The position numbers were made by a program, and so were the translations under genes. The notes beneath the pieces are model-generated. The model was not told the origin of the DNA. It searched no databases and worked only from the letters and a program-made list of their open reading frames with translations. From sequence record MT612988.1: a DNA stretch of 64,000 nucleotides. One strand, 5' to 3'. Positions within the stretch are counted from its first letter, which is position 1, and each line of letters opens with the position of its first letter. Shown here piece after piece: positions 39,535 to 53,288 of the stretch.

Positions 39535-39613
39535 TTTTAAATGTGCGTTAGCCGCAATGAATACATGGAGCCAGTATACGTTCTGGCGTGCAAGTAGCGC
39601 ACATTTAAAATAT
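39532..39613 (+). ncRNA. long-stem RNA with a CCGCAA variant of the helix-CWGCAA module
   Basis: 16-bp perfect IR (39532-47/39598-613) extended inward; CCGCAA at 39552. Confidence 0.5.
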
Positions 39614-39628
39614 CGAGAGTACATTGGT

Positions 39629-39751
39629 CGAGTGTTGGTGTAGTGGCAGCACACGTAGCATACTGTAATCAGACATGATTATATTCAGCAACCAATTTAC
39701 GCATATCATAGGGAGATCGTGGGAACGGTTCGATTCCGTTACACTCGACCA
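39629..39751 (+). ncRNA. tRNA-Pro(AGG)-like RNA with a 49-nt insertion between positions 28 and 29
   Basis: Acceptor CGAGTGT/ACACTCG+ACCA, D arm, CG|ATC-ATAGGGA-GATCG anticodon arm, T arm. The insert 39656-39704 holds a hairpin plus CAGCAA. Confidence 0.8.
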
Positions 39752-39784
39752 ATGTACTCTCACTAACAAAGCGAGGTGGACAAT

Positions 39785-39940
39785 TTGATTGTATATCTTC
39801 TCGCACTAGTATTCATCGTCCTCTTTGCCTTGGACATTGAAGAAGAAAAGGTGCGCATTCATACTTTTGCGCTAATCACATGCGAACGGGTCATTCATCC
39901 CGTAATTAAAGCGCACGATTCCAGATTGTGTTTTGATTAG
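39785..39940 (+). CDS. small membrane protein (TTG start)
   Basis: GAGGTGG RBS; N-terminal hydrophobic helix LIVYLLALVFIVLFAL; 51 aa. Confidence 0.5.
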   Translation: MIVYLLALVFIVLFALDIEEEKVRIHTFALITCERVIHPVIKAHDSRLCFD

Positions 39941-40010
39941 CTAAGGCAAATATAACTAGAGGATTTTTGGTGCTTGTGGTTAATCACAAGCACTCTCAAG
40001 AACATATTGA

Positions 40011-40132
40011 GCAGGGTTGGTGTAGTGGCTAGCACACGTAGCATAAACGCAAGCTGTTAAGTTTGTATTCTGCAATCAATTTAGCATATCATTTCCAAGA
40101 TCGTGACGCAGGTTCGAATCCTGCACCCTGCT
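40011..40132 (+). ncRNA. tRNA-Gly(TCC)-like RNA with a 49-nt insertion between positions 28 and 29
   Basis: GCAGGGT/ACCCTGC with U73; 8-nt loop ATTTCCAA; insert 40039-40087 holds a hairpin plus CTGCAA; no encoded CCA. Confidence 0.8.
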
Positions 40133-40150
40133 CAATATGTTTTTACATTG

Positions 40151-40264
40151 GTGAAGTTAGTTCAGTTGGTTAGAATGCCGGCCAAAAAAAACGAAGTCTG
40201 ATAAGATTTCATTCTGCATTCACATGCACGCCGGAGGTCGCAGGTTCGAGTCCTGCACTTCACC
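40151..40264 (+). ncRNA. tRNA-Asp-like body with ~43 nt inserted in the anticodon loop
   Basis: GTGAAGT/ACTTCAC, Asp-type D arm, CCGGC/GCCGG stem, T arm; insert has GAAGTC-TGATAA-GATTTC hairpin plus CTGCAT. Confidence 0.75.
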
Positions 40265-40274
40265 TTCAAATTCT

Positions 40275-40399
40275 GGAGAGTTAGCTCAGTCTGGTAGAGC
40301 AAAAGAATGTTAAAGAATACTGACAAGCATTCATGCTGCAAACCTTAATAACTAGGTAAATCTTTTTGTCACGCGGTTCAAATCCCGTACTCTCCACCA
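40275..40399 (+). ncRNA. tRNA-like RNA with an expanded anticodon loop
   Basis: GGAGAGT/ACTCTCC+ACCA, D arm, AAAGA/TCTTT stem enclosing GAATAC-TGACAA-GCATTC plus CTGCAA. Confidence 0.75.
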
Positions 40400-40413
40400 A
40401 TTTTCGAGGGTTT

Positions 40414-40782
40414 ATGAATAAGTTTAATGACATAAATGACGAACTTGATTGTATATTGCATCGTTGTGAGATTGTAAAGCGCAATCTTCGAAAATATTGT
40501 ACATTTGCTGTTGAAATGCAGTATAGACTTATGATAAACTTCATTGGCATGGGTTGCTATCAACAAGTTCTGCCGATATTAGACAATCTAAATTATCACC
40601 CTGATACAAGTCAGTTTGATAATATTGAGATTATGCAAACTATAAAAGAATTGATGAAATGTGCAGATAAGCTCGATTTGCTGCATCAACAAGACGCATT
40701 TCATCAAATTAAATCGACTGCTCGTATTACAGAAGAAGCAAACATCTTCGCTGCGAAAGTTGGTCGATTTCTAGAGAAATGA
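40414..40782 (+). CDS. hypothetical protein
   Basis: GAGGG RBS before ATG 40414; the track start overlaps a tRNA-like RNA. Confidence 0.7.
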   Translation: MNKFNDINDELDCILHRCEIVKRNLRKYCTFAVEMQYRLMINFIGMGCYQQVLPILDNLNYHPDTSQFDNIEIMQTIKELMKCADKLDLLHQQDAFHQIKSTARITEEANIFAAKVGRFLEK

Positions 40783-40783
40783 T

Positions 40784-40861
40784 GGCCCTATAGCTCAACA
40801 CGGTTAGAGCAACCGACTCATAATCGGTAGGTTACAGGTTCGAGTCCTGTTGGGGTCACCA
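40784..40861 (+). tRNA. tRNA-CAT (Ile2/lysidine type most likely)
   Basis: Cloverleaf, loop CTCATAA, GGCCC acceptor, CCA. Confidence 0.9.
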
Positions 40862-40881
40862 AAATAAATTGAAAAAAGTTG

Positions 40882-40910
40882 TTGACAGACGTTTCATCAA
40901 CGTGTAGTAT
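40882..40910 (+). promoter_or_regulatory. early/sigma70 promoter
   Basis: TTGACA-17 nt-TAGTAT. Confidence 0.8.
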
Positions 40911-40940
40911 ACACATTATCAACTACACGAGGAAAACATT

Positions 40941-41171
40941 ATGTCACATAAATTGCTAGTTATCACATCAATGCACGGTTGCTACGTCGATTACGATTTC
41001 AGAACTGAAATGTTTGACAGATACATGTGTGATGTTGTGATTCCGAACGACTCTGTTGTTTTGTACTCGGGTACAGTTTCAATAGATGAAATTCAAGCAG
41101 TTGCGAACGAATGTTACGCTGACATCAAGATTGAAGAAGTCAGTGATGATGTTTTTGACAGCTATCTTTAA
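40941..41171 (+). CDS. hypothetical acidic protein
   Basis: GAGG RBS, downstream of a promoter. Confidence 0.75.
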   Translation: MSHKLLVITSMHGCYVDYDFRTEMFDRYMCDVVIPNDSVVLYSGTVSIDEIQAVANECYADIKIEEVSDDVFDSYL

Positions 41172-41175
41172 AAAT

Positions 41176-41415
41176 GCCGCTAACTGGCGTACAATACACA
41201 GTGTATTCCCAACATTAGTGCAGACGTAGGCTCGCAACCTACGTTGGTACCGAATCACTGGGACCGAGTAGAAAGTGCATGTGAGATGTCGAAGTCTTGT
41301 ATGTAGAAATAACGCTCGGCTGCTCTGAAATGCTGATTAGCTCTTACTTCGAAACTCTAATTGGGTGGAAGAGGTGTTGTGTTTGACGTGTGTTCGATTC
41401 ACACGAGCGGCGCCA
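41176..41415 (+). ncRNA. 240-nt RNA with tmRNA-like tRNA termini
   Basis: GCCGCT/AGCGGC acceptor + GCCA, T arm GTGTG-TTCGATT-CACAC preceded by GAC, stemless D loop, helix ACAATAC/GTGTTGT. Confidence 0.7.
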
Positions 41416-41428
41416 AGAGGAAATTATA

Positions 41429-41950
41429 ATGAAACCATTGAAGTTCGTTGAAGCGTTCTCTAAAGAAGAACGTGCTGCTATGACGATTGAAGAACGTAGC
41501 AGACTTCGTAAAATATATAACGAACGCTATCAAGAGTATGTTGATAAGTACATCAATGTATTCACTCGAAAAGACTTTCGAAGAGAGCGTTGCTGGGTTA
41601 TTCTTGCACGATGTAAAAAGACTGGTGAAATCATCGGTCGAATTGAAAATAGTTTTAGTATGGGATGGTCTAAAGAGCGTGTTCGTGTTATTCGACCGTA
41701 TCTAAACGGTAATTTCACGGGCGATGACCGCTTCTCTAAAGCTGAGTACAACAAAGCGTGTGCTGAGTACATAACTCATCATGAGAAACAAGTAAAGTCT
41801 CTCAGAGAAGCTTACAAAGACACTCACGACGTTTTCTTATCTCGTGTGGGTAGTAAGAACTGTCCTGTTTCTATTGATTGGGATACGTATTACAGTAAAA
41901 AAGACAAACGAAACTTTGAATATCGAAATTTGAAATTCAAAGTTAAATAA
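41429..41950 (+). CDS. hypothetical basic protein
   Basis: GAGG RBS before ATG 41429. Confidence 0.75.
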   Translation: MKPLKFVEAFSKEERAAMTIEERSRLRKIYNERYQEYVDKYINVFTRKDFRRERCWVILARCKKTGEIIGRIENSFSMGWSKERVRVIRPYLNGNFTGDDRFSKAEYNKACAEYITHHEKQVKSLREAYKDTHDVFLSRVGSKNCPVSIDWDTYYSKKDKRNFEYRNLKFKVK

Positions 41951-41955
41951 TTCAT

Positions 41956-42071
41956 AGTCGGGTAGCTCAGTGGTAGAGCACGAAGAATGATACTGACAAG
42001 TATCGCTCCAGCACTCCTTCAATTGCCTGTTAAGCACGTGGTCGCTGGTTCGAATCCAGCCCCGACTACCA
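41956..42071 (+). ncRNA. tRNA-Asn(GTT)-like RNA with a 41-nt insertion between positions 28 and 29
   Basis: AGTCGGG/CCCGACT+ACCA; CG|TGC-CTGTTAA-GCACG; insert 41983-42023 has GATAC-TGACAA-GTATC plus CAGCAC. Confidence 0.82.
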
Positions 42072-42097
42072 TTTTTGATAAACTAGTGAGGTATAAC

Positions 42098-42334
42098 ATG
42101 AGCGGAACATTTAATATCAACAAAACGTTACTGACTCCGAAACAATTGCGCAATCTAACAGATGAGCGTCTGAATGAATATCGCAAGTCGTTTCGTAAGC
42201 CTCTTGGGTTTTTGAAGCATCTGAACGATACAAACGAATTGACTTCAGATCAGCACAAGAAATTCGTTGAGCTTAATAAGCACTACAACGACGAAATTCT
42301 TGCTGAAATGAACAAGCGAAAACACTTAGGTTAA
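42098..42334 (+). CDS. hypothetical protein
   Basis: GAGGT RBS before ATG 42098. Confidence 0.7.
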   Translation: MSGTFNINKTLLTPKQLRNLTDERLNEYRKSFRKPLGFLKHLNDTNELTSDQHKKFVELNKHYNDEILAEMNKRKHLG

Positions 42335-42604
42335 TAAAATCGCAGAAAATTGAAAAAAATTATCAATTTTCTGCGAAAATACCGCAAATCGTCAGATTTA
42401 GTGTTATAAGTACTATAAAGAAACAAAACAAATTTTAATTTTTATTTCAAGAGAGCATTCAATGACGCATTCGTTTACACATTCATCTGAGACATTACGC
42501 AGCGATTTTTTGCGCTCAGAATTCGTGTATCTAGCGAATCCGATTGCGAACCAGAAGTGGGATACCCTCTTGTAGTCCGATAGTATAACATAGAAGTATA
42601 CTTG

Positions 42605-42628
42605 AGGACGCAAATAGCGTCCTTTTTT
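42605..42628 (+). terminator. intrinsic terminator
   Basis: AGGACGC/GCGTCCT followed by a T tract. Confidence 0.8.
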
Positions 42629-42705
42629 ATGGGCGTAAGAAAGTTAAGAAATTTTGTTTAACGTACTTTGATTACAGAGTATGATAAACAAAGTTAAAGA
42701 ACAAA

Positions 42706-42779
42706 CGGGACGTGGCGTAAAGGTAGCGTTCATGCTTTGGGAGCATGTGGTAAGAGTTCGAGTCTCTTCGTCCCGACCA
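42706..42779 (+). tRNA. tRNA-Pro(TGG)
   Basis: Cloverleaf, loop TTTGGGA, CCA. Confidence 0.93.
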
Positions 42780-42788
42780 ATTTAAAAT

Positions 42789-42865
42789 CCGTGACTAGCT
42801 CAATCTGGTAGAGTACTCCGTTTGGGGCGGAGAAGTTAAGCGTTCGAATCGCTTGTCACGGACCA
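42789..42865 (+). tRNA. tRNA-Pro(TGG), second copy
   Basis: Cloverleaf, loop TTTGGGG, CCA. Confidence 0.93.
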
Positions 42866-42872
42866 GTTTAAT

Positions 42873-42948
42873 GCCCGATTAGCTCAATTGGAAGAGCAGC
42901 GCCCTACGAAGGCGAAGGTTACAAGTTCGAATCTTGTATTGGGTGCCA
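42873..42948 (+). tRNA. tRNA-Arg(ACG)
   Basis: Cloverleaf, loop CTACGAA, CCA. Confidence 0.93.
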
Positions 42949-43150
42949 GTTAGTGTTGTTTGATTGAAGCTCGCTTTCGCACATTCCCGAAACTGCTTCT
43001 ACGAATTGATACGCTTAGGACCGTATCTCGTTAAGTACTGTCGAGATGATAGAATTTAACGAACTTTTCATAAATTAGTGTTTATGATGTCTTGAGCGAG
43101 TGTTAATATTAACACATAGAAAATGAAAACGTTAAGTTCTTCAAAATAAA

Positions 43151-43283
43151 TTCAAAAAGATGTTTACAACGATATAAACATCGTGTACAATGAAGAAAAG
43201 CGAAACATCATTCAAAATCGAATGAAAAGTTTTTCAAAAAAGATGTTTACAACGATAAAAACATCATGTACAATGAAGAAAAG
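43151..43283 (+). promoter_or_regulatory. duplicated early promoters (two ~50-bp direct repeats)
   Basis: TTTACA-17 nt-TACAAT at 43163-43191 and 43246-43274. Confidence 0.85.
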
Positions 43284-43301
43284 AAGTTTACAAAATTTAA
43301 T

Positions 43302-43378
43302 GCGCAAGTAGCCCAATTGGCAGAGGCACTGGTCTTAGAAACCAGAAGTTAAGAGTTCGAATCTCTTCTTGCGTACCA
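43302..43378 (+). tRNA. tRNA-Leu(TAG), short variable loop
   Basis: Cloverleaf, loop CTTAGAA. Confidence 0.9.
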
Positions 43379-43379
43379 A

Positions 43380-43454
43380 GCACCCTTAGCTTATCAGGAA
43401 AAGCGGCGGATTGAAGTCCCGCAGTGCTCGGTTCGATTCCGAGGGGGTGCACCA
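43380..43454 (+). tRNA. tRNA-Phe(GAA)
   Basis: Cloverleaf, loop TTGAAGT. Confidence 0.88.
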
Positions 43455-43543
43455 TATTATAGCTTGTTTGTAAGAGTTAAATCAAGCAAGGGGTTTTAGT
43501 TTTGGGTTATTTAGCAAACGCTCTTAACGTGAAAATCAAATCT

Positions 43544-43618
43544 GGGTCGTTCGTATAACGGTAGTACATCTGGCTTTTAACCAGAACGGTGAGAGTTCGA
43601 ATCTCTTGCGACCCACCA
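43544..43618 (+). tRNA. tRNA-Lys(TTT)
   Basis: Cloverleaf, loop CTTTTAA. Confidence 0.92.
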
Positions 43619-43629
43619 GATTTTATAAT

Positions 43630-43706
43630 GCGTCGGTAGCTCATCATGGAAGAGCAGGGAGCTTTTAACTCTCAGGTGTCTGGTTCGAGTCCAGGGCGGC
43701 GTACCA
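43630..43706 (+). tRNA. tRNA-Lys(TTT), second copy
   Basis: Cloverleaf, loop CTTTTAA. Confidence 0.9.
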
Positions 43707-43769
43707 AATTAGATACATTGTGTATCGCTTTGCAAGTTAGATAGCTTGCAAATCAATATACAATTTAAT

Positions 43770-43844
43770 TCTCCCGTGGACTAACGGTAGGTCATCACCC
43801 TTTCAAGGTGAAGTGCGCGAGTTCGAATCTCGTCGGGAGAACCA
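43770..43844 (+). tRNA. tRNA-Glu(TTC)
   Basis: Cloverleaf, loop CTTTCAA. Confidence 0.92.
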
Positions 43845-43850
43845 AATTAC

Positions 43851-43936
43851 GGAGCGTACGTCTCAAGGTGAGACAGGGGACTGTAAATCCCTGACCCTTA
43901 ACGGGTAGAGAGGTTCGATTCCTCTACGCTCCACCA
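43851..43936 (+). tRNA. tRNA-Tyr(GTA)
   Basis: Loop CTGTAAA, long variable arm. Confidence 0.92.
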
Positions 43937-43941
43937 GTTTT

Positions 43942-44028
43942 AGCTTGCATACTGCAATTTAACTTAATCTATTGATCGCTCGGCGAACTCAGTTCAGACA
44001 GCGATAAACAGACCAAAGAACGCAAGCT
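43942..44028 (+). ncRNA. free-standing helix-CTGCAA RNA
   Basis: AGCTTGC/GCAAGCT closing helix, ATA-CTGCAA, inner ATCGCT/AGCGAT hairpin. Confidence 0.65.
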
Positions 44029-44038
44029 GTTGAATAAT

Positions 44039-44115
44039 TGCGGGGTAGAGAAGTGGTCATCTCGTCGGTCTCATAAGCCGGAGAACGCTGGTTCGAATCC
44101 AGCCCCACGCAACCA
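44039..44115 (+). tRNA. tRNA-fMet(CAT)-like, bulged acceptor stem
   Basis: TGCGGGG/CCC(A)CGCA-ACCA, loop CTCATAA. Confidence 0.8.
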
Positions 44116-44161
44116 AATTTATTTCGACTAAATATTGTTTTACGCAATAAGGAAAATTACA

Positions 44162-44404
44162 ATGAAAACATTTGATGAATTCATTACCGAGTCGAAAGAT
44201 GTTACTTTCGGAGTTTCTGGCTCACTTTTTAGTGGTGCAATGGATAGAGAGAGACATCGAAACATGATGCAAAAACTTGGCGCTGTTAGAGACACCAAAT
44301 CAAAATCACAAGATAATGTTTGGGTTGTCAGTCAAGCGAATGCTGATGCAGTTGAAGAATATCTTAGTCAGTTTGATAAGCTGATGTGGGGTAGACACAA
44401 ATAA
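44162..44404 (+). CDS. candidate internal head protein (capsid-targeting sequence)
   Basis: MKTFDEFITE|S; late-promoter-like ACTAAATA at 44127. Confidence 0.75.
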   Translation: MKTFDEFITESKDVTFGVSGSLFSGAMDRERHRNMMQKLGAVRDTKSKSQDNVWVVSQANADAVEEYLSQFDKLMWGRHK

Positions 44405-44410
44405 TTAATT

Positions 44411-44509
44411 GGAAGGCTTAGCCGAGAGATTCTGGGTAGCGGCAACGGTCTTGAAAACCGTCGGTCACCGGGAGGTGATGTTAGGGTTCGAATCCCTAGT
44501 CTTCCGCCA
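44411..44509 (+). tRNA. tRNA-Ser(TGA), enlarged D loop
   Basis: Loop CTTGAAA, long variable arm. Confidence 0.88.
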
Positions 44510-44573
44510 ATTAGTTAACCGGTAAGTTTAGTCACTTAACCGATTAACACGAGCACTGAAATGTGCTCACTTT

Positions 44574-44647
44574 AGTCCCTTAGCTCAACGGTAGAGCGTG
44601 CGACCGATAATCGCTTGGTAAGAGTTCGATTCTCTTAGGGACTACCA
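44574..44647 (+). tRNA. tRNA-Ile(GAT)
   Basis: Loop CCGATAA. Confidence 0.9.
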
Positions 44648-44653
44648 AATTTT

Positions 44654-44727
44654 AGGGGCATGATGTAAAGGCAGCATGACGGATTCCAAACCCGTTCGTT
44701 AGAGTTCGAATCTCTATGCCCCTGCCA
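44654..44727 (+). tRNA. tRNA-Trp(CCA)
   Basis: Loop TTCCAAA, G73. Confidence 0.9.
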
Positions 44728-44732
44728 GTTTA

Positions 44733-44790
44733 AGTAATCTTACAGCAAACAATACAAAACTTTTATTTGGAAAAAGCAAAAAGGATTACT
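44733..44790 (+). ncRNA. free-standing helix-CAGCAA RNA
   Basis: AGTAATCT/GGATTACT helix, TA-CAGCAA, inner CTTTT-ATTTGGA-AAAAG anticodon-like hairpin. Confidence 0.65.
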
Positions 44791-44802
44791 GTTTAAATTC
44801 AA

Positions 44803-44877
44803 GGGTGTGTAACTCAGAGGCAGAGTAGCAAGCTGTTAACTTGCAAGTCGAGATTTCGAAATTCTCCACGCCCGCCA
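44803..44877 (+). tRNA. tRNA-Asn(GTT), atypical T stem
   Basis: Loop CTGTTAA. Confidence 0.85.
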
Positions 44878-44878
44878 C

Positions 44879-44954
44879 GCTTCATTAACTCAGTTGGTAG
44901 AGTGTCTGACTGTTAATCAGAGAGTCGTTGGTTCGAGTCCAACATGAAGCGCCA
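44879..44954 (+). tRNA. tRNA-Asn(GTT), second copy
   Basis: Loop CTGTTAA. Confidence 0.93.
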
Positions 44955-45023
44955 AATTCGGAGAGTCACTACCGTTAAGTGTGAACTTGAAAAAACAAAG
45001 CAACTAATTTAAGTTGTCTTTGG

Positions 45024-45099
45024 GGAGCCGAGGTGTAAAAGGTTGCATGTCTCCCTGTCACGGAGAAGGTAGCGGGTTCGAAACCCGTCGGTTCCGCCA
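45024..45099 (+). tRNA. tRNA-Asp(GTC)
   Basis: Loop CTGTCAC. Confidence 0.92.
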
Positions 45100-45118
45100 A
45101 AGATAATTTAAGAACAAT

Positions 45119-45192
45119 TGGGGATTGGTGTAAAGGCAGCATAACGTACTTTGAATGCGTTGGTATCAGTTCGAATCTGTTATCCCCAGCCA
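45119..45192 (+). tRNA. tRNA-Gln(TTG)
   Basis: Loop CTTTGAA, U1-A72. Confidence 0.92.
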
Positions 45193-45201
45193 AATACCAT
45201 A

Positions 45202-45315
45202 GAGTGTTTTCAGCAAACAATTTACTAATATTCTTCTGATGAAAAGAAAAGTTCGAGGTTCGATTCCTCTTCAGTGTCGGTATCACTGGTCTGGACGACG
45301 CTAGTAATAACACTC
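45202..45315 (+). ncRNA. circularly permuted tRNA mimic (YrlA-like topology) with CAGCAA
   Basis: GAGTGTT/AACACTC closing helix; order is CAGCAA, anticodon-like hairpin, T arm, loop-capped stem CAGTG/CACTG, D-like GTC-TGGAC-GAC. Confidence 0.75.
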
Positions 45316-45321
45316 AGTTAC

Positions 45322-45396
45322 GCTCCTGAAGCATTGATGGCGATGCAGCGGTCTTGTAAACCGCAGAATTCGGTTCGATTCCGAACGGGAGCACCA
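45322..45396 (+). tRNA. tRNA-Thr(TGT)
   Basis: Loop CTTGTAA. Confidence 0.92.
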
Positions 45397-45421
45397 TATT
45401 GATTAGAAAGTGTTATCATGA

Positions 45422-45429
45422 TATAAATA
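45422..45429 (+). promoter_or_regulatory. late promoter TATAAATA
   Basis: Exact consensus, 31 nt upstream of the 45460 ORF. Confidence 0.8.
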
Positions 45430-45459
45430 GTCATGTAACTACATTTTAGAGGTAATAAC

Positions 45460-45735
45460 ATGTCTATTAAAACATTTTCTGAATATCTTAACGAAGCAAA
45501 GCATCGTGGGTCTGGCGTAGACACTCATGACGGTAAGATTCCGTATGTATACGCTGACAGTAAAGACGCTGCTGCATTTGCTGATTTCGTATCGTCAATA
45601 GGTATGAAGCTTGATTCGAACGGTGAATTGAAGCTTTCTACACGAGATAAAGTACGAAAGTTCTTCTCAGAGCTTGATCAAGAAGCAACTAATTTCATGC
45701 TTCATGGCAACTTTGATATTATTGAATATATGTAA
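45460..45735 (+). CDS. candidate internal head protein (capsid-targeting sequence)
   Basis: MSIKTFSEYLNE|A; late promoter and GAGG RBS. Confidence 0.78.
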   Translation: MSIKTFSEYLNEAKHRGSGVDTHDGKIPYVYADSKDAAAFADFVSSIGMKLDSNGELKLSTRDKVRKFFSELDQEATNFMLHGNFDIIEYM

Positions 45736-45750
45736 AAATTGGTGATTGTA

Positions 45751-45960
45751 ATGGTATATATTTCTGTATGGTGTGAATATGACATTGGTGGGGATTTCGG
45801 TGGCAACAATAACGAAGATGTTTTTTCCGTTAGTGAAGAATTATCTAATGAAGAAGTTGAAGCAAAAGTTGCTGAATATATTTCTGACATTGTTGGTGAG
45901 CCGATTGAAGAACTTGAAGGTTTATACGGTTGGGAATATATTTCAATCACACAGTTGTAA
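45751..45960 (+). CDS. hypothetical acidic protein
   Basis: GGTG RBS before ATG 45751. Confidence 0.65.
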   Translation: MVYISVWCEYDIGGDFGGNNNEDVFSVSEELSNEEVEAKVAEYISDIVGEPIEELEGLYGWEYISITQL

Positions 45961-45967
45961 AAAATAT

Positions 45968-46042
45968 GGGCCGTTAGCTTAATTGGGAAAGCGCCTCACT
46001 TGCAATGAGGAAGATAGGGTTCGACTCCCTGCGTGTCCACCA
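45968..46042 (+). tRNA. tRNA-Ala(TGC), irregular acceptor stem
   Basis: Loop CTTGCAA, G3-U70. Confidence 0.82.
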
Positions 46043-46116
46043 AATTTCGAACACATGAGCGTAGACTCTCTTTACTACCATCGTCTACACTAGTTCATGG
46101 TTCGAATCTTTTCAAT

Positions 46117-46192
46117 GCGCTGTTAGCTCAATTGGAAGAGCACGTCCCTTCTAAGGATGGGGTTATGAGTTCGAATCTCATACGGCGTGCCA
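46117..46192 (+). tRNA. tRNA-Arg(TCT)
   Basis: Loop CTTCTAA. Confidence 0.93.
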
Positions 46193-46204
46193 TATTAAGC
46201 TCTT

Positions 46205-46715
46205 ATCATGCGACGAATGATACTTTGCTTCGGCATATCACGAGCATGGTGAGAGAGACAATATACAGCAAACAATTGAAATTACTTAAAAGAAGTGATG
46301 ATCTTAACCTGGGCTGATTTTAACCTGAGCTTGCTTAGGCGCAGCTTGAAAGGAAAGATTCTCTCTGTCTAGAAATAGTCAGATAGGCGCGTCGCTGAAA
46401 CAGACGATATTTGCTTGTTGAGAATCAATAAGCTAGTCAACTCCGATTTATGCAAAAGACGAAAAAACACTTCGGTATTGTCTGTACTTAATTCGTCGGA
46501 AACGACACTGTAGCCGAAAGGCAAGATACGCTAACTTAGATGTTAGCAGCGATATAGGATGTATCGCGTGGCATTATTATGAACGTTTCTAGTCATCGTC
46601 ATGTAAAACAATCAAAACTAAGCAGAGGTAACAGTACCCACTATGTGGTTCCTCACTCAGACCATGAATATATGGTGTCAGCCAGTGTGCGATTAAATGA
46701 GTTAATTACTGCAAT
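46205..46715 (+). ncRNA. ~500-nt highly structured non-coding region containing a helix-CAGCAA module (46252-46366)
   Basis: Many stable hairpins (C-UUCG-G and GAAA tetraloops); no RBS-led ORF. Confidence 0.6.
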
Positions 46716-46716
46716 T

Positions 46717-46792
46717 GGTGATGTAGCTCAAGTGGCAGAGCAACGCTTTCATACGGCGTAAGATCCGATTTCGAGTATCGGTGTCACCTCCA
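46717..46792 (+). tRNA. tRNA-Met(CAT), atypical (U73, T stem lacks G53-C61)
   Basis: Cloverleaf, loop TTCATAC. Confidence 0.75.
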
Positions 46793-46812
46793 AATTCAAA
46801 AACAAAGAGGTT

Positions 46813-46977
46813 ACGAAGCATGACTACTTTACACTAAGCAAGGGCAACATACGCGATAAAATTCGATATGTTGAAAAATGTCTCGCGAATGAGACCAACC
46901 CGTTCTTTATAAGAACACTTACTGTAGAGCTTACGAATCTACGTGCAATACGTGATTTGTTCGACGCTTCAGATTAA
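46813..46977 (+). pseudogene. 54-codon open frame beginning ACG after a GAGG RBS
   Basis: KHDYFTLSKGNIRDKIRYVEKCL...; no ATG in frame. Confidence 0.4.
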
Positions 46978-46981
46978 CAAT

Positions 46982-47055
46982 GCGGGTATGATGTAATGGT
47001 AGCATGACGTCCTTCCAAGTCGTTCGTCTCGGTTCGAGTCCGTGTACCCGCTCCA
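46982..47055 (+). tRNA. tRNA-Gly(TCC)
   Basis: Loop CTTCCAA, U73. Confidence 0.9.
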
Positions 47056-47061
47056 AATTTT

Positions 47062-47135
47062 GGTCCCTTAGTATAATGGCAGTACGTCTCTTTTACACAG
47101 AGAAAGAAGTGGCTCGATTCCACTAGGGACTACCA
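47062..47135 (+). tRNA. tRNA-Val(TAC)
   Basis: Loop TTTACAC. Confidence 0.88.
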
Positions 47136-47158
47136 TTCTTTATGATGAGAAATAAATT

Positions 47159-47398
47159 ATGACGCCTGCATTACTTGAAACTCATGAATACGTAAACCAC
47201 AACCAAATCGAAAAGCTACAGCAAATGGACAGACTTATGTTTGATTGTTGGCGTGCTGGGTATAAACGTGGCAAGATTTTAGAGCTTGCATTGTCGATTG
47301 AGTCTTCAACAACCGAAGCAGACATCGAAATTTATTTCAAAAATATGTTTACAAGAGAACTATCGGCTGATAGTATCTACTTAAAGAAAACTGTATGA
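47159..47398 (+). CDS. hypothetical protein
   Basis: 79-aa ORF between tRNAs, GAG RBS. Confidence 0.65.
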   Translation: MTPALLETHEYVNHNQIEKLQQMDRLMFDCWRAGYKRGKILELALSIESSTTEADIEIYFKNMFTRELSADSIYLKKTV

Positions 47399-47550
47399 CG
47401 GAGTAGTGCTCCGACCGAATGACACACGCAAATGAGTCCGGTTGACAAACGTTATATGTCCCAAAGTATTGCAGGTAGCGACGGCGGTGTTGCTAGTAGA
47501 TTTATCTATTTCTCCAAGACATAATGCAAGCTTTTAAAGTGTACTTTGGT

Positions 47551-47627
47551 GTGGCAGTGGGTGAAGTGGAAATACCCCCGGGTTGTGATTCCGGAAGATG
47601 CGGGTTCGATCCCCGTCTGTCACCCCA
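47551..47627 (+). tRNA. tRNA-His(GTG)
   Basis: Loop TTGTGAT, C73. Confidence 0.9.
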
Positions 47628-47639
47628 AAGTACATTTAT

Positions 47640-47713
47640 GCTCGAATCGTATAATGGAAGTATGACGGATTGCAAATCCGCAGGTCAGGGTTCGATTCCC
47701 TGTTCGAGCTCCA
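47640..47713 (+). tRNA. tRNA-Cys(GCA)
   Basis: Loop TTGCAAA, U73. Confidence 0.9.
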
Positions 47714-47715
47714 AT

Positions 47716-47792
47716 GCGCACGTGGTCCAATTGGCAGAGGCATGAGGCTTAAAATCTCAGGGATGGCGGTTCGAATCCGCCCGTGCGTACCA
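47716..47792 (+). tRNA. tRNA-Leu(TAA), short variable loop
   Basis: Loop CTTAAAA. Confidence 0.9.
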
Positions 47793-47908
47793 AATTCTAG
47801 CATAAGCCGCGTTCTATACGAAGCTAGACTACCGCCGTTGAAAAACGGTCTCAGCCGAGCGAAAGCTGACAGGTGTTAGGGATTAAAGAGTCGCGGCAGT
47901 TTATTCAA

Positions 47909-47985
47909 GCCCAACTAGTCCAATTGGCAGAGGCACTAGTTTCAAACACTAGGAGTTCCGAGTTCGAATCTCGGGTTGGGCACCA
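47909..47985 (+). tRNA. tRNA-Leu(CAA), short variable loop
   Basis: Loop TTCAAAC. Confidence 0.9.
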
Positions 47986-48153
47986 AATTCACTTAGCAAC
48001 GCGAATCGAAAGAGAGTGGATAGACCTGCTAAGAGTCCCGCTAGGTCTTTAAATTATCTAAAGTGGATCTGCGAAGCGCGTGGCACACGTCAGCAATAAG
48101 AGCAAATATGTGTCTGAGCATGAGAGCAGCATGCCATTAATTGATGAGACGTT

Positions 48154-48242: not shown

Positions 48243-48247
48243 AATTC

Positions 48248-49841: not shown

Positions 49842-50189
49842 ATGTTTGTAATGATTGATGATATGCGTGATATCGATAAGTTCACTGCGCCTGAAATTTC
49901 CGCAGATCAGAAGCTTGTTTTGCGTACGTATGAAGACGGTATGAAATTCGTCAAACATACGAATCTTACAGATATTACTTTATTCATGGACAATGATCTA
50001 GGCGGTGCTCTTGGTCATGAGGGATATGATATTCTCTCTCATGCAATTGATCATCGTAACTTCCCACGCACAGTTGTTCTAGTAACGAGTAACCCTGTTG
50101 CTCACTCTAAGATGACTATGATGTTGATGGGTACACTTCAATATAAACGTGTGGGTTCTATCTTTATGAGGCAAGATACATGCACTTAA
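49842..50189 (+). CDS. cyclic-phosphate-processing receiver-domain protein
   Basis: IDDMR...FMDNDLG...GYDIL...TSNPV matches the LDDxR/LDHDLG/GYD/SxNPxG signature. Confidence 0.75.
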   Translation: MFVMIDDMRDIDKFTAPEISADQKLVLRTYEDGMKFVKHTNLTDITLFMDNDLGGALGHEGYDILSHAIDHRNFPRTVVLVTSNPVAHSKMTMMLMGTLQYKRVGSIFMRQDTCT

Positions 50190-51188: not shown

Positions 51189-51200
51189 ATTAAAAAAAGT

Positions 51201-51229: not shown

Positions 51230-51241
51230 CACTTCATCAAA

Positions 51242-51282
51242 GACATTTTACAGCAATTAATTATGAGGAAATGAACAATGTC
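51242..51282 (+). promoter_or_regulatory. leader helix-CAGCAA module enclosing the RBS and start codon
   Basis: GACATT (51242-47) pairs with AATGTC (51277-82), which includes ATG 51278; TTA-CAGCAA at 51248-56; RBS GAGG in the loop. Confidence 0.75.
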
Positions 51283-52714
51283 AGTATTTATGAACGCAAT
51301 GCAAACAAACGATTCACGCACAGCAAACGGTGCAGTTACTCACAGCACTTCAGGTAACGAGTGTCTAAACTTGTTCTTCGGTATTGCTGCTATGCGTGGC
51401 AACGATCAGTCTAAAACACTGTTCGGTCGTGCGTTTGCAGAAAACCCAGAACTAGCGACTCGCATTCTTTTGTGGTCTCGTGATGTTCGAGGTGGTGCGG
51501 GTGAACGTGGTACTTTCCGTACTCTATTCACTAAACTTTGTAATGAACAGCCTGACGTAGCTCGTGCTGTAATGTCGAAAATTCCAGAACTAGGTCGTTA
51601 CGATGACTTGATTTCTGCTTTCGGTACACGTCTTGAAAAAGATGCGATTACAATGTGGTCGAACGCAATTGTCAATGACAAGAATGGTCTTGCTGCGAAG
51701 TGGTTCCCACGTGAAAACAGCAAAAACGGTCATGTGTTCAAGCGCACAATCAAGTCTCTTGGCGTAACTGCGAAGCAGTGGCGTAAGATTCTGTCGCTTC
51801 TGTCTGACACTGTTGAGCAGAAGATGTGTGCGCAAAAATGGGATGCAATCGACTTCGGTAAGTTGCCTTCTGTAGCGTCTGCTCGTTATCAACAAGCATT
51901 CGGTCGTAACGCTTCAACACGTTACACAAACTACATCGAGTCACTTCAAAAAGGTGAAGCGAAGATCAACGCTGGCGCATTGTTCCCATACGATGTCGTT
52001 AAGAGCGTTAGTCACGGTAATGCGTCTGTAGCGAACGAGCAATGGAAAGCTCTGCCAAACTACATGGAAGGTTCTGATGAACGCATCATCCCTGTTGTTG
52101 ACGTGTCTGGCTCTATGAGCACGCCAATTAACGCAGGTACAGACCGTTCAGGTGTGACTTGTAAGCAAGTTGCAATGTCTCTTGGGATTTATGTTGCTGA
52201 ACGCAATGAAGGCATCTTCAAAGATCAGTTCATTTCGTTCTCAAGCGACCCGCACTTCCACCAGTTGCGCGGCTCTTCATTGAAAGAGCGTCTTGATAAC
52301 ATGAATCGTTCAGGCGAAGACATGAGCACGAACATCGGTAAGTGCTTTGATGTTCTGTTAGAACGTGCGAAGCGTGCAAATCTTTCACAAGAAGATATGC
52401 CAACCAAGTTGCTTATCATGAGTGACATGGAATTCGATCAAGCAAACACTGGTGGTGGTTGGTACGGTCGCGGTGAACCTGCGAACTTCGATGCAATCAA
52501 AGCCAAGTACGCACGTGCTGGTTATGAAATGCCACAACTGGTCTTCTGGAACATTCGTGGTCGTCTTGGCAACGTTCCGGTTAAAGCTGGTGAAGCGGGT
52601 ACTGCACTGGTATCTGGTTGTAGCCCATCTATCTTGACTTCACTGTTGGGTGGTGAGCTTGAGCCAATCAAGATCATGATGAAAACTGTAGGCGTCGAAC
52701 GCTACAGCTTTTAA
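51278..52714 (+). CDS. TROVE-like + vWA domain protein (Ro60/Rsr-related, DUF2828-like)
   Basis: N-terminal T.NGA..H.TSGN.CL.LFF, RDVRGGAGER, GRYDDL, AAKWFPRE helical region; vWA MIDAS DVSGSMS; SDMEFD; LVFWN. Confidence 0.88.
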   Translation: MSVFMNAMQTNDSRTANGAVTHSTSGNECLNLFFGIAAMRGNDQSKTLFGRAFAENPELATRILLWSRDVRGGAGERGTFRTLFTKLCNEQPDVARAVMSKIPELGRYDDLISAFGTRLEKDAITMWSNAIVNDKNGLAAKWFPRENSKNGHVFKRTIKSLGVTAKQWRKILSLLSDTVEQKMCAQKWDAIDFGKLPSVASARYQQAFGRNASTRYTNYIESLQKGEAKINAGALFPYDVVKSVSHGNASVANEQWKALPNYMEGSDERIIPVVDVSGSMSTPINAGTDRSGVTCKQVAMSLGIYVAERNEGIFKDQFISFSSDPHFHQLRGSSLKERLDNMNRSGEDMSTNIGKCFDVLLERAKRANLSQEDMPTKLLIMSDMEFDQANTGGGWYGRGEPANFDAIKAKYARAGYEMPQLVFWNIRGRLGNVPVKAGEAGTALVSGCSPSILTSLLGGELEPIKIMMKTVGVERYSF

Positions 52715-52723
52715 ATAAGTGAT

Positions 52724-52757: not shown

Positions 52758-53288
52758 GTGAAAATGTTCGATTGGGAAGCGATAGAAACAGCTATCAATA
52801 ACAGTCATCCAAATAGCACAATATACGTTGGGTGTGATAGTAAGCGTAAAAGTGACATGATTAGTTACGCGACTGTGATCATAATTCATCTTGAAGGTAG
52901 TAAAGGTGCTCAAGTGTTTAAAGCAGTTGAGACTGAACCTGCATACTTATCATGTAAAGATGGTATCAGAAGTCGATTGATGAATGAAGTATACAAAGCG
53001 GGTGAAACTGCACTAATGGTTAAGCCAATGTGCGGTACTAGAGGCTTTGAAGTTCACGTTGACATCAACCCTGACCCTACACACAAATCTCACGTTGCCT
53101 ATAACGAAGCTAAAGGCACGATCATGGGATATGTTGGTCAAGAGCCCGTGTTCAAACCTGATGCGTTTGCTGCGTCTTGTGCTGCTGATTATGACGCAGT
53201 TCGAAGAGCAGATAAAATCGCTAAACGAAAAGAACTTAGACGGGCTAAACGAAAAGCAAAGAAACAAAAAACAAAAGGGCGCAAATAG
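52758..53288 (+). CDS. RNase H-fold protein (DUF458-like) with basic C-tail
   Basis: IYVGCDS, RLMNEV, EVHVDIN, ASCAAD acidic residues; GTG start with GAGG RBS. Confidence 0.75.
   Translation: MKMFDWEAIETAINNSHPNSTIYVGCDSKRKSDMISYATVIIIHLEGSKGAQVFKAVETEPAYLSCKDGIRSRLMNEVYKAGETALMVKPMCGTRGFEVHVDINPDPTHKSHVAYNEAKGTIMGYVGQEPVFKPDAFAASCAADYDAVRRADKIAKRKELRRAKRKAKKQKTKGRK

What the first reader, a model, noticed from the sequence alone, without database searches (positions are those of the whole stretch)
39629..42071. Three tRNAs (Pro-AGG, Gly-TCC, Asn-GTT) carry an extra arm at the identical position 28/29
Seen: removing 39656-39704 (49 nt), 40039-40087 (49 nt) or 41983-42023 (41 nt) restores a cloverleaf with an intact anticodon stem (CG|ATC..GATCG, CG|ATC..GATCG, CG|TGC..GCACG). 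The first two also keep appropriate identity elements (C1-G72/A73 for Pro; G1-C72, C2-G71, U73 for Gly). All inserts hold a hairpin plus CWGCA. The inserts are far too short for group I/II introns. A shared insertion site in different isotypes argues against random decay into pseudo-tRNAs. Inference: they are either protein-binding arms on anticodon-displaying decoys, or short introns removed by cleavage and ligation.
Basis: partly seen in the sequence, partly recalled or inferred. Interest (0 to 1): 0.86.

Follow-up and report, generated by a model that had tools for sequence, protein, structure and literature searches.

The report
Ro60-docking arms built into phage tRNAs
The extra arms in these vibriophage tRNAs are real and conserved, and they look like docking platforms for a phage Ro60-like protein rather than introns; the same platform occurs widely in phages and closely resembles the Class I RNAs of social amoebae.

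Summary
The window is Vibrio phage vB_ValM_R10Z, a KVP40-like phage. Five tRNA-like genes, not three, carry the same 40-56 nt module: a covarying hairpin capped C-U-[GNYA]-A-G, exactly 8 nt, then CNGCA. The junction is 28/29 in three of them. One of those (B) has an 8-nt "anticodon" loop. In the other two the module replaces the anticodon loop or follows it.

The module is not specific to this phage. The same platform sits inside tRNAs in about 90 unrelated viral contigs. It also occurs as free-standing ~65-nt units that display a small anticodon-like hairpin, or a permuted tRNA body. One free-standing unit lies in the window at 44732-44791.

These RNAs are genetically tied to a DUF2828/DUF7788 protein (window 51278-52714). 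Its predicted fold matches Ro60/TROVE+vWA. In 64 of 75 loci chosen by that protein, a unit lies directly beside the gene. In the window a copy of the motif sits in the gene's own 5' UTR and can pair over the start codon.

Best reading: these are tRNA/Y-RNA chimeras that dock a Ro60-like protein next to an anticodon arm. They are probably not introns or decayed pseudogenes. The architecture matches dictyostelid Class I RNAs. Protein binding and biological role are inferred, not shown.

The parts
39615..39761 (+). Element A. tRNA-like body 39629-39751 (AGG loop 39708-39714). The platform is inserted at 28/29 (39656-39704): hairpin 39665-39682 with a GACA loop, and CAGCA at 39686-39690. The leader 39615-39628 pairs with the trailer 39748-39761 and extends the acceptor helix by 14 bp.
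   Evidence: Sequence read. 96-98% identical in KVP40, nt-1 and VS2, whose surrounding region is only 80-87% identical. In K566 the hairpin (CTTAC/GTAAG against TAATC/GATTA), the acceptor stem and the leader/trailer helix all change by compensation, and the anticodon becomes TAG.
40001..40141 (+). Element B. tRNA-like body 40011-40132. Platform at 28/29 (40039-40087): hairpin 40050-40065 with a GTTA loop, and CTGCA at 40070-40074. The 8-nt loop ATTTCCAA is at 40091-40098. There is no CCA. Leader 40001-40010 pairs with trailer 40132-40141.
   Evidence: The acceptor and leader/trailer helices covary between R10Z and KVP40 (TTGA/TCAA against TAGT/ACTA). Loop length and sequence differ between orthologues.
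40150..40264 (+). Element C. tRNA-like body with G-1 opposite C73 and an intact anticodon stem (40178-40182 with 40230-40234). Its loop is replaced by an A-rich linker, hairpin 40193-40210 (GATA loop) and CTGCA at 40214-40218. No anticodon-like loop is present.
   Evidence: Rfam tRNA 53.6 bits across the insert. Exact module match. Conserved in KVP40, nt-1 and V09. Annotated tRNA-Pseudo-5 in KVP40.
40275..40400 (+). Element D. tRNA-like body with stem AAAGA/TCTTT and an intact ATGTTAA loop (40307-40313, GTT), followed by the platform: hairpin 40315-40332 (GACA loop) and CTGCA at 40336-40340, then a weak small hairpin. CCA is encoded.
   Evidence: Rfam tRNA 50.1 bits. Exact module match. Orthologues. 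Annotated tRNA-Pseudo-4 in KVP40.
41956..42071 (+). Element E. tRNA-like body with the platform at 28/29 (41983-42023): hairpin 41989-42004 (GACA loop) and CAGCA at 42009-42013. Local anticodon hairpin TGC-CTGTTAA-GCA at 42024-42036. CCA is encoded.
   Evidence: Rfam tRNA 49.8 bits. Exact module match. 96-99% identical in KVP40, nt-1 and VS2. Annotated tRNA-Pseudo-3 in KVP40.
44732..44791 (+). Free-standing Class-I-like unit between tRNA-Trp and tRNA-Asn: AAG, TAATC, TTACAGCAA, an A-rich linker, hairpin CAAA-ACTTTTA-TTTG (a UUU loop), an A-rich linker, GATTA, then CTG.
   Evidence: Rfam RF01414 at 31.8 bits, E=0.008, full model length. Sequence. Found independently by the closing-helix search. 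The KVP40 copy appears (L057).
51240..51282 (+). Copy of the platform in the 5' UTR of the Ro60-like gene: AAG, ACATT, TTACAGCAA, the SD GAGGA, then AATGT-C overlapping the ATG at 51278. A promoter-like TTTACA-16-TATAAT lies at 51202-51229.
   Evidence: Conserved in KVP40, nt-1, D525, F86 and 1.081.O. There is no covariation to test, because the 3' strand is the start of the coding sequence.
51278..52714 (+). Ro60-like protein gene (478 aa; DUF2828 plus DUF7788/vWA with a MIDAS motif DVSGS). It is the proposed partner of the platform.
   Evidence: Pfam E=2e-29 and 2e-46. AlphaFold pLDDT 84.8 and pTM 0.86. The Foldseek top 11 hits are all Ro60/TROVE, probability 1.0, TM 0.5-0.63.
52758..53288 (+). 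YkuK-type RNase H-like protein gene directly downstream. It recurs near the RNA module in other phages.
   Evidence: Pfam PF04308 E=2e-17. A homologue is present in 7 of the module-selected loci.
49842..50189 (+). cREC gene (cyclic-phosphate-processing receiver-like), in the same gene block.
   Evidence: Pfam PF20274 E=9e-15. The family is linked to RNA repair in PMC7824862 and PMC9503650.
48253..48268 (+). Possible further copy of the 5' half of the platform (AAG-ACATTG-TACAGCA), just after the last tRNA of the array.
   Evidence: Pattern match. No convincing closing helix, and the fold z-score is -0.43. Membership is uncertain.

Best explanation
The insert is a protein-docking platform that belongs to a large, so far uncurated family of phage Y-RNA-like RNAs. 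It is not an intron.

The platform is a 5-7 bp helix. One end is closed by C-G and U-A pairs around a GNYA tetraloop. In free-standing units that end is instead left open as 5'-AAG...CUG-3'. On the other end the 3' strand of the hairpin runs straight into a single-stranded (N)NCAGCA(A) motif, then an 8-14 nt A/U-rich linker, then an anticodon-type stem-loop.

In the window this platform has been built into the upper anticodon stem or the loop of five tRNA-like genes. This gives tRNA/Y-RNA chimeras.

The proposed partner is the phage's Ro60-like protein (51278-52714). It would bind the helix plus the CAGCAA strand, much as Ro60 binds the stem and the GNCGAA/GGUCCGA strand of Y RNAs. That would hold a tRNA body or a bare anticodon arm on the protein ring. 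The copy in its own 5' UTR would let the protein repress its own translation.

The likely role is in the tRNA-centred conflict of infection. The RNP would present anticodon-arm mimics as bait or tether for enzymes that recognise anticodon loops (host anticodon nucleases, repair or modification enzymes), or gate the Ro-like ring in tRNA quality control.

Shown: the RNA architecture, its covariation, its spread, the gene-RNA linkage and the protein fold.
Inferred: physical binding, autoregulation, retention of the arm in the mature RNA, and the decoy/tether role.
For: 1. Fixed geometry well beyond chance: 4 exact matches against 0.04 expected.
2. Helix covariation: 22 distinct stems among 46 unique copies, 99 double-sided changes against 29 +/- 4.5 in shuffles, covariation score 0.78 against 0.17.
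3. The same module lies upstream of a T-loop in 94 diverse IMG/VR stretches.
4. Free-standing units: 152 close with a helix of at least 5 bp followed by CUG, against 21 in the control. Median length is 65 nt. Their payload is a hairpin with a CU-NNN-AA loop.
5. In chain arrays the helix has the same flanks but is closed on the payload side. So the platform exists without any exons.
6. Linkage from the RNA side: a DUF2828 gene lies within a 15-kb-or-shorter locus in 19 of about 94 module-selected loci.
7. Linkage from the protein side: 64 of 75 DUF2828-selected loci have a unit beside the gene on the same strand, at 1.77 per kb against 0.26-0.28 per kb elsewhere.
8. Units also lie next to the gene or the tRNA array in FelixO1, mycobacteriophage Lumos, Listeria P100 and Campylobacter CPX.
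9. The protein fold matches Ro60/TROVE+vWA. Ro60 genes with adjacent tRNA-mimicking Y RNAs are established (PMC4201824, PMC12135203).
10. A conserved UTR copy can pair over the AUG.
11. The window elements are 96-99% conserved while the anticodon loops vary (AGG/TAG, and 7- against 8-nt loops). One Glu-like body carries TTC, GTC, TCT or GTT in different contigs.
Against: - No expression, end-mapping or binding data exist for any of these RNAs.
- In the window the five embedded copies lie 9-11 kb from the protein gene. Only the UTR copy is adjacent.
- About 80% of module-selected loci show no DUF2828 gene in the short stretch held, so co-occurrence at the genome level is untested for them.
- The covariation set was pre-selected for pairing at four positions.
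- The UTR helix cannot covary, so autoregulation rests on conservation alone.
- Deleting the insert does restore a good cloverleaf with CCA in A, D and E, so removal of the arm cannot be excluded.
- Nothing distinguishes decoy, tether and quality-control roles.
Confidence: 0.62

Rival explanations
1. Short introns. The arm is excised from the pre-tRNA by a protein endonuclease and the halves are rejoined by a phage or host RNA ligase. This would give ordinary Pro, Asn and other tRNAs used in translation.
For: - In-silico deletion restores a canonical cloverleaf with a 7-nt loop and an encoded CCA in A, D and E.
- The insert point clusters at 26-29.
- The phage carries RNA-end-processing genes, cREC and a YkuK-type nuclease.
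- Some annotation pipelines call these genes long tRNAs (phi-Grn1).
Against: - The same platform occurs as free-standing and chained units with nothing to splice.
- B and many relatives would be left with 8-11-nt loops.
- C has no anticodon loop at all.
- Anticodons do not match the identity of the body (A is TAG in K566 without a long variable arm; Glu-like bodies carry GTC, TCT or GTT).
- The acceptor ends of A and B are buried in 10-14 bp leader/trailer helices that covary.
- No bulge-helix-bulge can be drawn at the junctions of A, B or E (inspection).
- The inserts are far too short for group I or II introns, and Rfam finds no ribozyme.
Confidence: 0.12
2. Processing signal. The C-U-G-A-Y-A-A-G element is a cleavage site for an endonuclease, possibly the linked YkuK-type RNase H-like protein or a host RNase. 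Cutting it would release the chained units as ~60-nt RNAs with AAG...CUG ends. In the embedded copies it would open the tetraloop, giving two-piece tRNAs held together by the helix. This can coexist with the best explanation.
For: - In chain arrays CUGAYAAG is the only linker between consecutive units.
- Isolated units keep only AAG at the 5' side and CUG at the 3' side. These are the mature ends reported for dictyostelid Class I RNAs (PMC7919456).
- A YkuK-type gene recurs near the RNAs.
Against: No end-mapping data exist. The tetraloop reading (C-G and U-A closing GNYA) explains the conservation equally well without cleavage. No nuclease has been tied to the site.
Confidence: 0.15
3. Decayed pseudo-tRNAs. 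These would be tRNA genes disrupted by insertion of a small mobile or repeated DNA element and no longer functional, as the KVP40 annotation implies.
For: - KVP40 labels C, D and E 'tRNA-Pseudo'.
- ARAGORN does not call any of them.
- The phi-pp2 paper reports three low-scoring pseudo-forms.
- The similar inserts in different tRNAs suggest spread of a common element.
Against: - The elements are more conserved than their surroundings (96-99% against 80-87%).
- Helices in the insert, the tRNA body and the flanks are kept by compensatory changes.
- The arrangement recurs in about 90 unrelated viral contigs with fixed geometry.
Confidence: 0.04

Closest known systems
Bacterial and phage Y RNAs (YrlA type) with Ro60/Rsr
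   Same: - A ring-shaped TROVE+vWA-type protein gene has one or more small RNA genes beside it on the same strand.
- The RNAs have a terminal helix with a conserved single-stranded motif on the 5' strand side.
- They carry tRNA mimicry. Some chain units have the YrlA topology (T-arm, closed acceptor, D-arm) and are hit by the YrlA model over its full length.
   Different: - The protein is DUF2828/DUF7788, not Pfam TROVE. It has 10-16% identity to solved Ro60s.
- The motif is ACAGCAA, not GNCGAA/GGUCCGA.
- YrlA scores are 24-39 bits against a gathering score of 69.
- Many units carry only a mini anticodon arm.
- In the window the platform sits inside complete tRNAs whose ends are in the acceptor stem, a topology not described for Y RNAs.
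Dictyostelid Class I RNAs (Rfam RF01414)
   Same: - About 60 nt long.
- A 6-bp terminal stem kept by compensatory changes.
- A conserved motif (CCUUACAGCAA) directly after the 5' stem strand.
- Conserved ends, AAG at the start and CUG(U) at the end.
- A variable A-rich interior (PMC7919456).
- The Dictyostelium-built model aligns end-to-end with phage units that were defined independently. Some phage copies carry the exact 11-mer.
   Different: - Scores of 29-34 bits are below the gathering score of 41.5.
- The eukaryotic promoter element DUSE does not apply.
- The known Dictyostelium partner is the RRM protein Rnp1A, not a Ro-like protein.
- Whether dictyostelids encode a DUF2828 protein was not established here.
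- The resemblance could be convergent.
Archaeal/eukaryal tRNA introns at non-canonical positions (bulge-helix-bulge type)
   Same: Short inserts (tens of nucleotides) in tRNA genes, sometimes in the anticodon stem. Deleting them restores a cloverleaf.
   Different: No bulge-helix-bulge at the junctions. No splicing endonuclease gene was noted. The same sequence module also exists outside tRNAs. Restored loops are often non-canonical.
Phage tRNAs and tRNA repair as counter-defence to anticodon nucleases (T4 Pnkp/Rnl1 against PrrC; phage tRNAs against PARIS and retron nucleases)
   Same: The setting is a large phage tRNA cluster beside RNA-end-processing genes. The RNAs display anticodon loops, including UUU (Lys), a classic nuclease target (PMC12409363 abstract).
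   Different: Those systems use ordinary tRNAs or enzymes. A protein-docked anticodon-arm mimic has not been described, and no nuclease sensitivity was tested here.

Membership tests
Y RNA / Ro60 RNP | RNA gene lies within a few kb of a Ro60-type protein gene, on the same strand | tested here: met
   64 of 75 DUF2828-selected loci have a unit within -300 to +450 nt of the gene on the same strand. In the window the UTR copy is adjacent, and the embedded copies lie 9-11 kb upstream on the same strand.
Y RNA / Ro60 RNP | Partner protein has the Ro60 ring fold (HEAT-repeat TROVE plus vWA with MIDAS) | tested here: met
   AlphaFold model with pLDDT 84.8. The Foldseek top 11 hits are all Ro60/TROVE, full length, probability 1.0. 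The Pfam TROVE model itself does not hit; Pfam gives DUF2828 and DUF7788.
Y RNA / Ro60 RNP | Conserved Ro-binding motif GNCGAA(N)G or GGUCCGA in the stem or bulge | tested here: not met
   The motif here is (N)NCAGCA(A). The GNCGAA definition is taken from PMC4201824.
Y RNA / Ro60 RNP | Rfam YrlA gathering score (69 bits) | tested here: not met
   Best scores are 24-39 bits, and only on units that carry a permuted tRNA body. The window elements A-E are not hit.
Y RNA / Ro60 RNP | Physical association of the RNA with the protein | not testable with these tools
   Needs RIP/CLIP or EMSA.
Dictyostelid Class I RNA (RF01414) | ~60 nt RNA with a 6-bp terminal stem kept by compensatory changes | tested here: met
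   152 units against 21 in the control, median 65 nt. Stems vary widely.
Dictyostelid Class I RNA (RF01414) | Conserved 11-nt motif next to the 5' stem strand, with conserved AAG start and CUG(U) end | tested here: met
   The flanks AAG and CTG and the motif (T/A)ACAGCAA recur. The exact CCTTACAGCAA is present in L103 and L106. The definition is from PMC7919456.
Dictyostelid Class I RNA (RF01414) | Rfam gathering score (41.5 bits) | tested here: not met
   17-34 bits, always over the full model length and on independently defined units.
Dictyostelid Class I RNA (RF01414) | Shared protein partner or common descent | tested here: inconclusive
   No named dictyostelid DUF2828 homologue surfaced in the top lists. 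The literature search gives DUF2828 only in plant and tardigrade contexts.
tRNA intron (bulge-helix-bulge type) | Two 3-nt bulges separated by a 4-bp helix at the exon-intron junctions | tested here: not met
   By inspection of the junction sequences of A, B and E, the intron ends cannot form the central helix. This was not tested with a dedicated program.
tRNA intron (group I, bacterial) | Intron of more than 200 nt with a group I core, inserted in the anticodon loop | tested here: not met
   The inserts are 41-56 nt and there is no Rfam ribozyme or intron hit at E<=1.
Canonical elongator tRNA | Continuous 5-bp anticodon stem, 7-nt loop, and an anticodon consistent with the identity elements of the body | tested here: not met
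   All five are interrupted. B has an 8-nt loop and C has no loop. The anticodon changes between orthologues on the same body. ARAGORN calls none of them.

The most novel reading that the evidence does not exclude
The phage RNAs and the dictyostelid Class I RNAs are one RNA class: a terminal helix with AAG/CUG ends plus an ACAGCAA strand. Its ancestral and general partner would be a DUF2828-type Ro60-like protein. In phages the class would be used to display anticodon arms or whole tRNAs on that protein, as bait or tether in the conflict over tRNA cleavage and repair. If so, Class I RNAs, reported as unique to social amoebae and of unknown mechanism, would be Y-RNA analogues with testable partners. 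Phage tRNA clusters would then contain a hidden layer of non-translational tRNA chimeras.
Probability: 0.3. Interest if true: 0.92.

Novelty: new variant of a known kind. Interest (0 to 1): 0.8.

Why it matters
- It gives a function-linked explanation for the 'pseudo-tRNAs' that have been in the KVP40 annotation since 2003.
- It shows that tRNA counts in large phages include RNAs that are probably not adaptors.
- It assigns a candidate RNA partner and a recognisable binding platform to DUF2828. That family has more than 7,000 members and occurs in 710 cultured phage genomes, including FelixO1, P100-like Listeria phages and Campylobacter phages used in biocontrol.
- It extends the Ro60/Y-RNA principle to a second, much more phage-rich protein family, in a new topology where the platform is grafted into the anticodon stem of a tRNA.
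- It links a eukaryotic RNA class of unknown mechanism (dictyostelid Class I RNAs) to a prokaryotic virus system where genetics is easy.
- If the RNPs act on anticodon nucleases or tRNA repair, they would be a new kind of phage counter-defence.

Tried and rejected
- **Self-cleaving ribozyme or known intron.** The Rfam scan at E<=1 over 38.5-49 kb of the window and over several chain loci gave no ribozyme or intron family.
- **Hammerhead reading.** The resemblance of CUGAUAAG to CUGAUGAG was rejected. The essential G is replaced, there is no GAAA strand, and Rfam gives no hit.
- **In-silico deletion scan with ARAGORN to locate the junction.** It was too permissive, because it accepts deletions reaching into the D-arm. 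I replaced it with a direct T-loop-anchored parse.
- **Very relaxed helix+CNGCA detector over the window.** It gave hundreds of chance hits on both strands and was discarded.
- **Consensus promoter/terminator scan around A-E.** Nothing decisive.
- **Folding of 48246-48436 and 41183-41428.** The z-scores were -0.43 and -1.43, which is not significant.
- **Literature.** Searches for phage tRNA mini-introns and split or permuted tRNAs gave no relevant paper. The KVP40 genome paper is not held.
- **Search for eukaryotic or dictyostelid DUF2828 proteins.** Querying with the protein concatenated to itself shifted the length window. It returned only longer metagenomic and bacterial homologues, so it was uninformative.
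- **Rfam YrlA hit at 40236-40300 in the window.** It simply spans the T-arm of C and the 5' part of D, so it is not a separate RNA.

Full report
**What the window is.** The region is 100% identical to Vibrio phage vB_ValM_R10Z, a KVP40-like schizo-T4 phage. ARAGORN finds 28 tRNAs at 40784-48242 but none of the claimed genes. Rfam's tRNA model bridges three interrupted genes, at 40151-40264, 40275-40396 and 41956-42068. KVP40's own record calls these three 'tRNA-Pseudo-5/-4/-3'. The phi-Grn1 record calls all five as 113-122-nt tRNAs of assorted isotypes.

**The observation.** Reading the sequence confirms elements A (39629-39751) and E (41956-42071). Removing 39656-39704 or 41983-42023 restores a 5-bp anticodon stem, a 7-nt loop (AGG or GTT) and an encoded CCA.

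Element B (40011-40132) regains the stem, but its loop has 8 nt and it has no CCA. Two further genes carry the same insert elsewhere. In C (40150-40264) it replaces the whole anticodon loop. In D (40275-40400) it follows an intact ATGTTAA loop.

All five inserts share a fixed geometry: a helix, C-T-G-N-Y-A-A-G, exactly 8 nt, then C-N-G-C-A. There are four exact matches against 0.04 expected. Element A has the same geometry with the U-A pair flipped to A-U. The C-G and U-A pairs close a GNYA tetraloop.

**Conservation.** A and E are 96-99% identical in KVP40, nt-1 and VS2, although the surrounding region is only 80-87% identical. In the more distant K566 three helices change by compensation:
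- the insert hairpin of A (TAATC/GATTA becomes CTTAC/GTAAG);
- its acceptor stem;
- a 14-bp leader/trailer helix that extends the acceptor stem.

Element B has a similar covarying 10-bp extension.

The 'anticodon' loops, in contrast, are not conserved. A is AGG in R10Z and TAG in K566, with no long variable arm. B is ATTTCCAA, ATTCATAA, ATTCTAA or ATTTCAA in different phages.

**Spread.** A scan of IMG/VR for the module followed by a T-loop found 94 stretches in very diverse contigs. Most are tRNAs with the module in the upper anticodon stem. A T-loop-anchored parse of 70 unique copies puts the junction at 28/29 in 29, at 27/28 in 19 and at 26/27 in 6, with 16 other layouts. The linker from CAGCA to the local anticodon hairpin is 8-14 nt.

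One Glu-like tRNA body (D-stem GTCT/GGAC) carries TTC, GTC, TCT or GTT in different contigs. Other contigs with the same TTCC/GGAAG anticodon stem show TGA, CAT or an 8-nt loop. Among 46 unique hairpins there are 22 different stems. Double-sided changes number 99, against 29 +/- 4.5 in shuffles. That set was selected for pairing, so only the variety of pairs is informative.

**The second arrangement.** In about 15 loci the strand after one CTGAYAAG pairs with the strand before the next one. The helix has the same flanks as in the hairpin. One strand runs A-rich linker, strand, CUG. The other runs AAG, strand, NN-CAGCAA. Here, however, the helix is closed on the payload side. This defines a free-standing unit.

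There are 152 units with a closing helix of at least 5 bp followed by CUG, against 21 in a control with a shuffled 5' strand. Median length is 65 nt, and they occur in 65 loci.

The payload is usually a 4-6 bp hairpin with a 7-nt loop of anticodon type: CU-UGU-AA, CU-UUU-AA, CU-GAU-AA or CU-GUU-AA. Some units instead carry a permuted tRNA body with T-arm, closed acceptor and D-arm. The window has one free-standing unit at 44732-44791, showing a UUU loop. Because the platform exists without exons, an intron reading is unlikely.

**Known families that resemble it.** Rfam's only matches to the units, all below the gathering scores, are these:
- RF01414, Dictyostelium Class I RNA: 17-34 bits against 41.5, always over the full model length;
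- YrlA, for the units with a tRNA body: 24-39 bits against 69.

Kjellin et al. describe Class I RNAs as about 60 nt long. They have a 6-bp terminal stem kept by compensatory changes, an 11-nt motif next to the 5' stem strand, a conserved AAG start and a conserved CUGU end. The authors found no evidence for the class outside Dictyostelia (PMC7919456). The phage units have every one of these structural features, and some carry the exact CCUUACAGCAA.

**The protein partner.** A further copy of the motif lies at 51240-51256, in a 5' UTR downstream of a sigma-70-like promoter. Its helix strand pairs with AATGTC, which overlaps the ATG at 51278, and the Shine-Dalgarno sequence lies in the enclosed loop. 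This UTR is conserved in KVP40, nt-1, D525, F86 and 1.081.O.

The gene encodes a 478-aa DUF2828+DUF7788 protein with a MIDAS motif. It is flanked by a cREC gene and a YkuK-type RNase H-like gene. Its AlphaFold model (pLDDT 84.8, pTM 0.86) matches Ro60/TROVE proteins over the full length. The matches include Xenopus Ro60, Deinococcus Rsr and Thermus phage Ro60, at probability 1.0 and TM 0.5-0.63, and they fill the top 11 places.

Linkage holds in both directions:
- 19 of about 94 module-selected loci of 15 kb or less contain a DUF2828 homologue, and 7 contain the YkuK-type gene.
- Among 80 loci selected by DUF2828 homology, the half-motif occurs 55 times against 7 in shuffles. Nearly all copies are on the gene strand, and most lie just downstream of the stop codon.
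- With a structure-aware detector, 64 of 75 loci have a unit beside the gene, at 1.77 per kb against 0.26-0.28 per kb elsewhere.

The protein family has more than 7,400 members and occurs in 710 cultured phage records. In FelixO1, mycobacteriophage Lumos (where it is annotated 'Ro-like RNA binding protein'), Listeria P100 and Campylobacter CPX, the gene sits next to tRNA genes and to unannotated units of this kind.

**Relation to published Y RNAs.** Chen et al. found YrlA RNAs with a GNCGAA motif next to Pfam-TROVE genes in 254 bacteria and 22 phages (PMC4201824). A Thermus phage Ro60 binds two adjacent Y-like RNAs that carry a CGAA bulge (PMC12135203). The present family follows the same principle but differs in four ways: a different protein family, a different motif (ACAGCAA), mini anticodon-arm payloads, and, in the window, insertion into complete tRNAs. 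I found no paper describing it. DUF2828 appears only in unrelated plant and tardigrade papers.

**Interpretation.** The best-supported reading is that the arms are docking platforms for the Ro60-like protein, which makes A-E tRNA/Y-RNA chimeras. The mechanism beyond that is inferred. I propose three steps:
- the protein binds the helix and the CAGCAA strand;
- the UTR copy gives translational autoregulation;
- the RNP presents anticodon arms or tRNA bodies to enzymes that recognise them.

The neighbourhood (cREC, a YkuK-type nuclease, a 28-tRNA array) fits such a role. So does the known tie between Ro60/Y RNA operons and tRNA damage (abstract of PMC7790460; PMC7824862). The free variation of the displayed anticodons also fits a bait or tether role in the conflict over tRNA cleavage and repair. 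None of this has been tested.

Three alternatives remain. Splicing is unlikely but not excluded. Cleavage at the CUG/AAG joint could coexist with the main reading. Pseudogene decay is contradicted by the conservation and covariation.

**Limits.**
- There are no expression or binding data for any of these RNAs.
- Co-occurrence was measured on short loci, not on whole genomes.
- The Class I resemblance could be convergent.
- Whether dictyostelids encode a DUF2828 protein could not be determined.

Noticed in passing
window 41185-41428 (+): An intergenic stretch of about 240 nt begins GCCGCT and ends with a T-arm (CGTGTG-TTCGATT-CACACG), AGCGGC, G, CCA. It looks like an acceptor/T-arm mini-helix enclosing about 190 nt, somewhat like a tmRNA. 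It has no G3:U70. ARAGORN and Rfam do not hit it, and the fold z-score is only -1.43. The annotated GTG start at 41390 of the next ORF overlaps it; ATG 41430 with its own SD looks like the more likely start.
   Followed up: partly
window 39540-39608 (+): A 9-bp inverted repeat (AAATGTGCG...CGCACATTT) encloses TTAG-CCGCAAT and a small hairpin, directly upstream of element A. It may be a variant unit with a CCGCAA core. The stretch is missing from most KVP40-like relatives, whose alignments start at query position 86.
   Followed up: no
window 48253-48268 (+): AAG-ACATTG-TACAGCA lies right after the last tRNA (Ser). Its helix strand is nearly identical to that of the UTR copy at 51240. No closing strand was found nearby. 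It is followed by a terminator-like hairpin at about 48400-48432.
   Followed up: partly
window 45968-46039 (+): Rfam's tRNA model scores 44.9 bits here, but ARAGORN lists no gene. This may be an additional or unusual tRNA in the array.
   Followed up: no
window 49842-53288 (+): Gene block of a cREC protein, three small unknown ORFs, the Ro60-like protein and a YkuK-type RNase H-like protein, just upstream of the tail-fibre genes. KVP40 annotates the second ORF of the block (locus L181 1494-1868; the window counterpart is 50180-50545) as similar to T4 arn.3.
   Followed up: partly
L035 1-337 (-), and the arrays in L061, L084 and L023: In several metagenomic phages the chained units sit next to a tmRNA gene (52 bits in L035) or within tRNA arrays. 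Single arrays mix mini anticodon-arm units with permuted tRNA-body units.
   Followed up: partly
L185 (Vibrio phage D480), upstream of the DUF2828 gene: A homing endonuclease gene has replaced the usual promoter/UTR region. A different CTTACAGCA copy abuts the ATG directly.
   Followed up: no
window 40784-40861 (+): ARAGORN calls the CAT-anticodon tRNA here Met, whereas KVP40 annotates it as tRNA-Ile-2. It may be a lysidine-type Ile tRNA.
   Followed up: no
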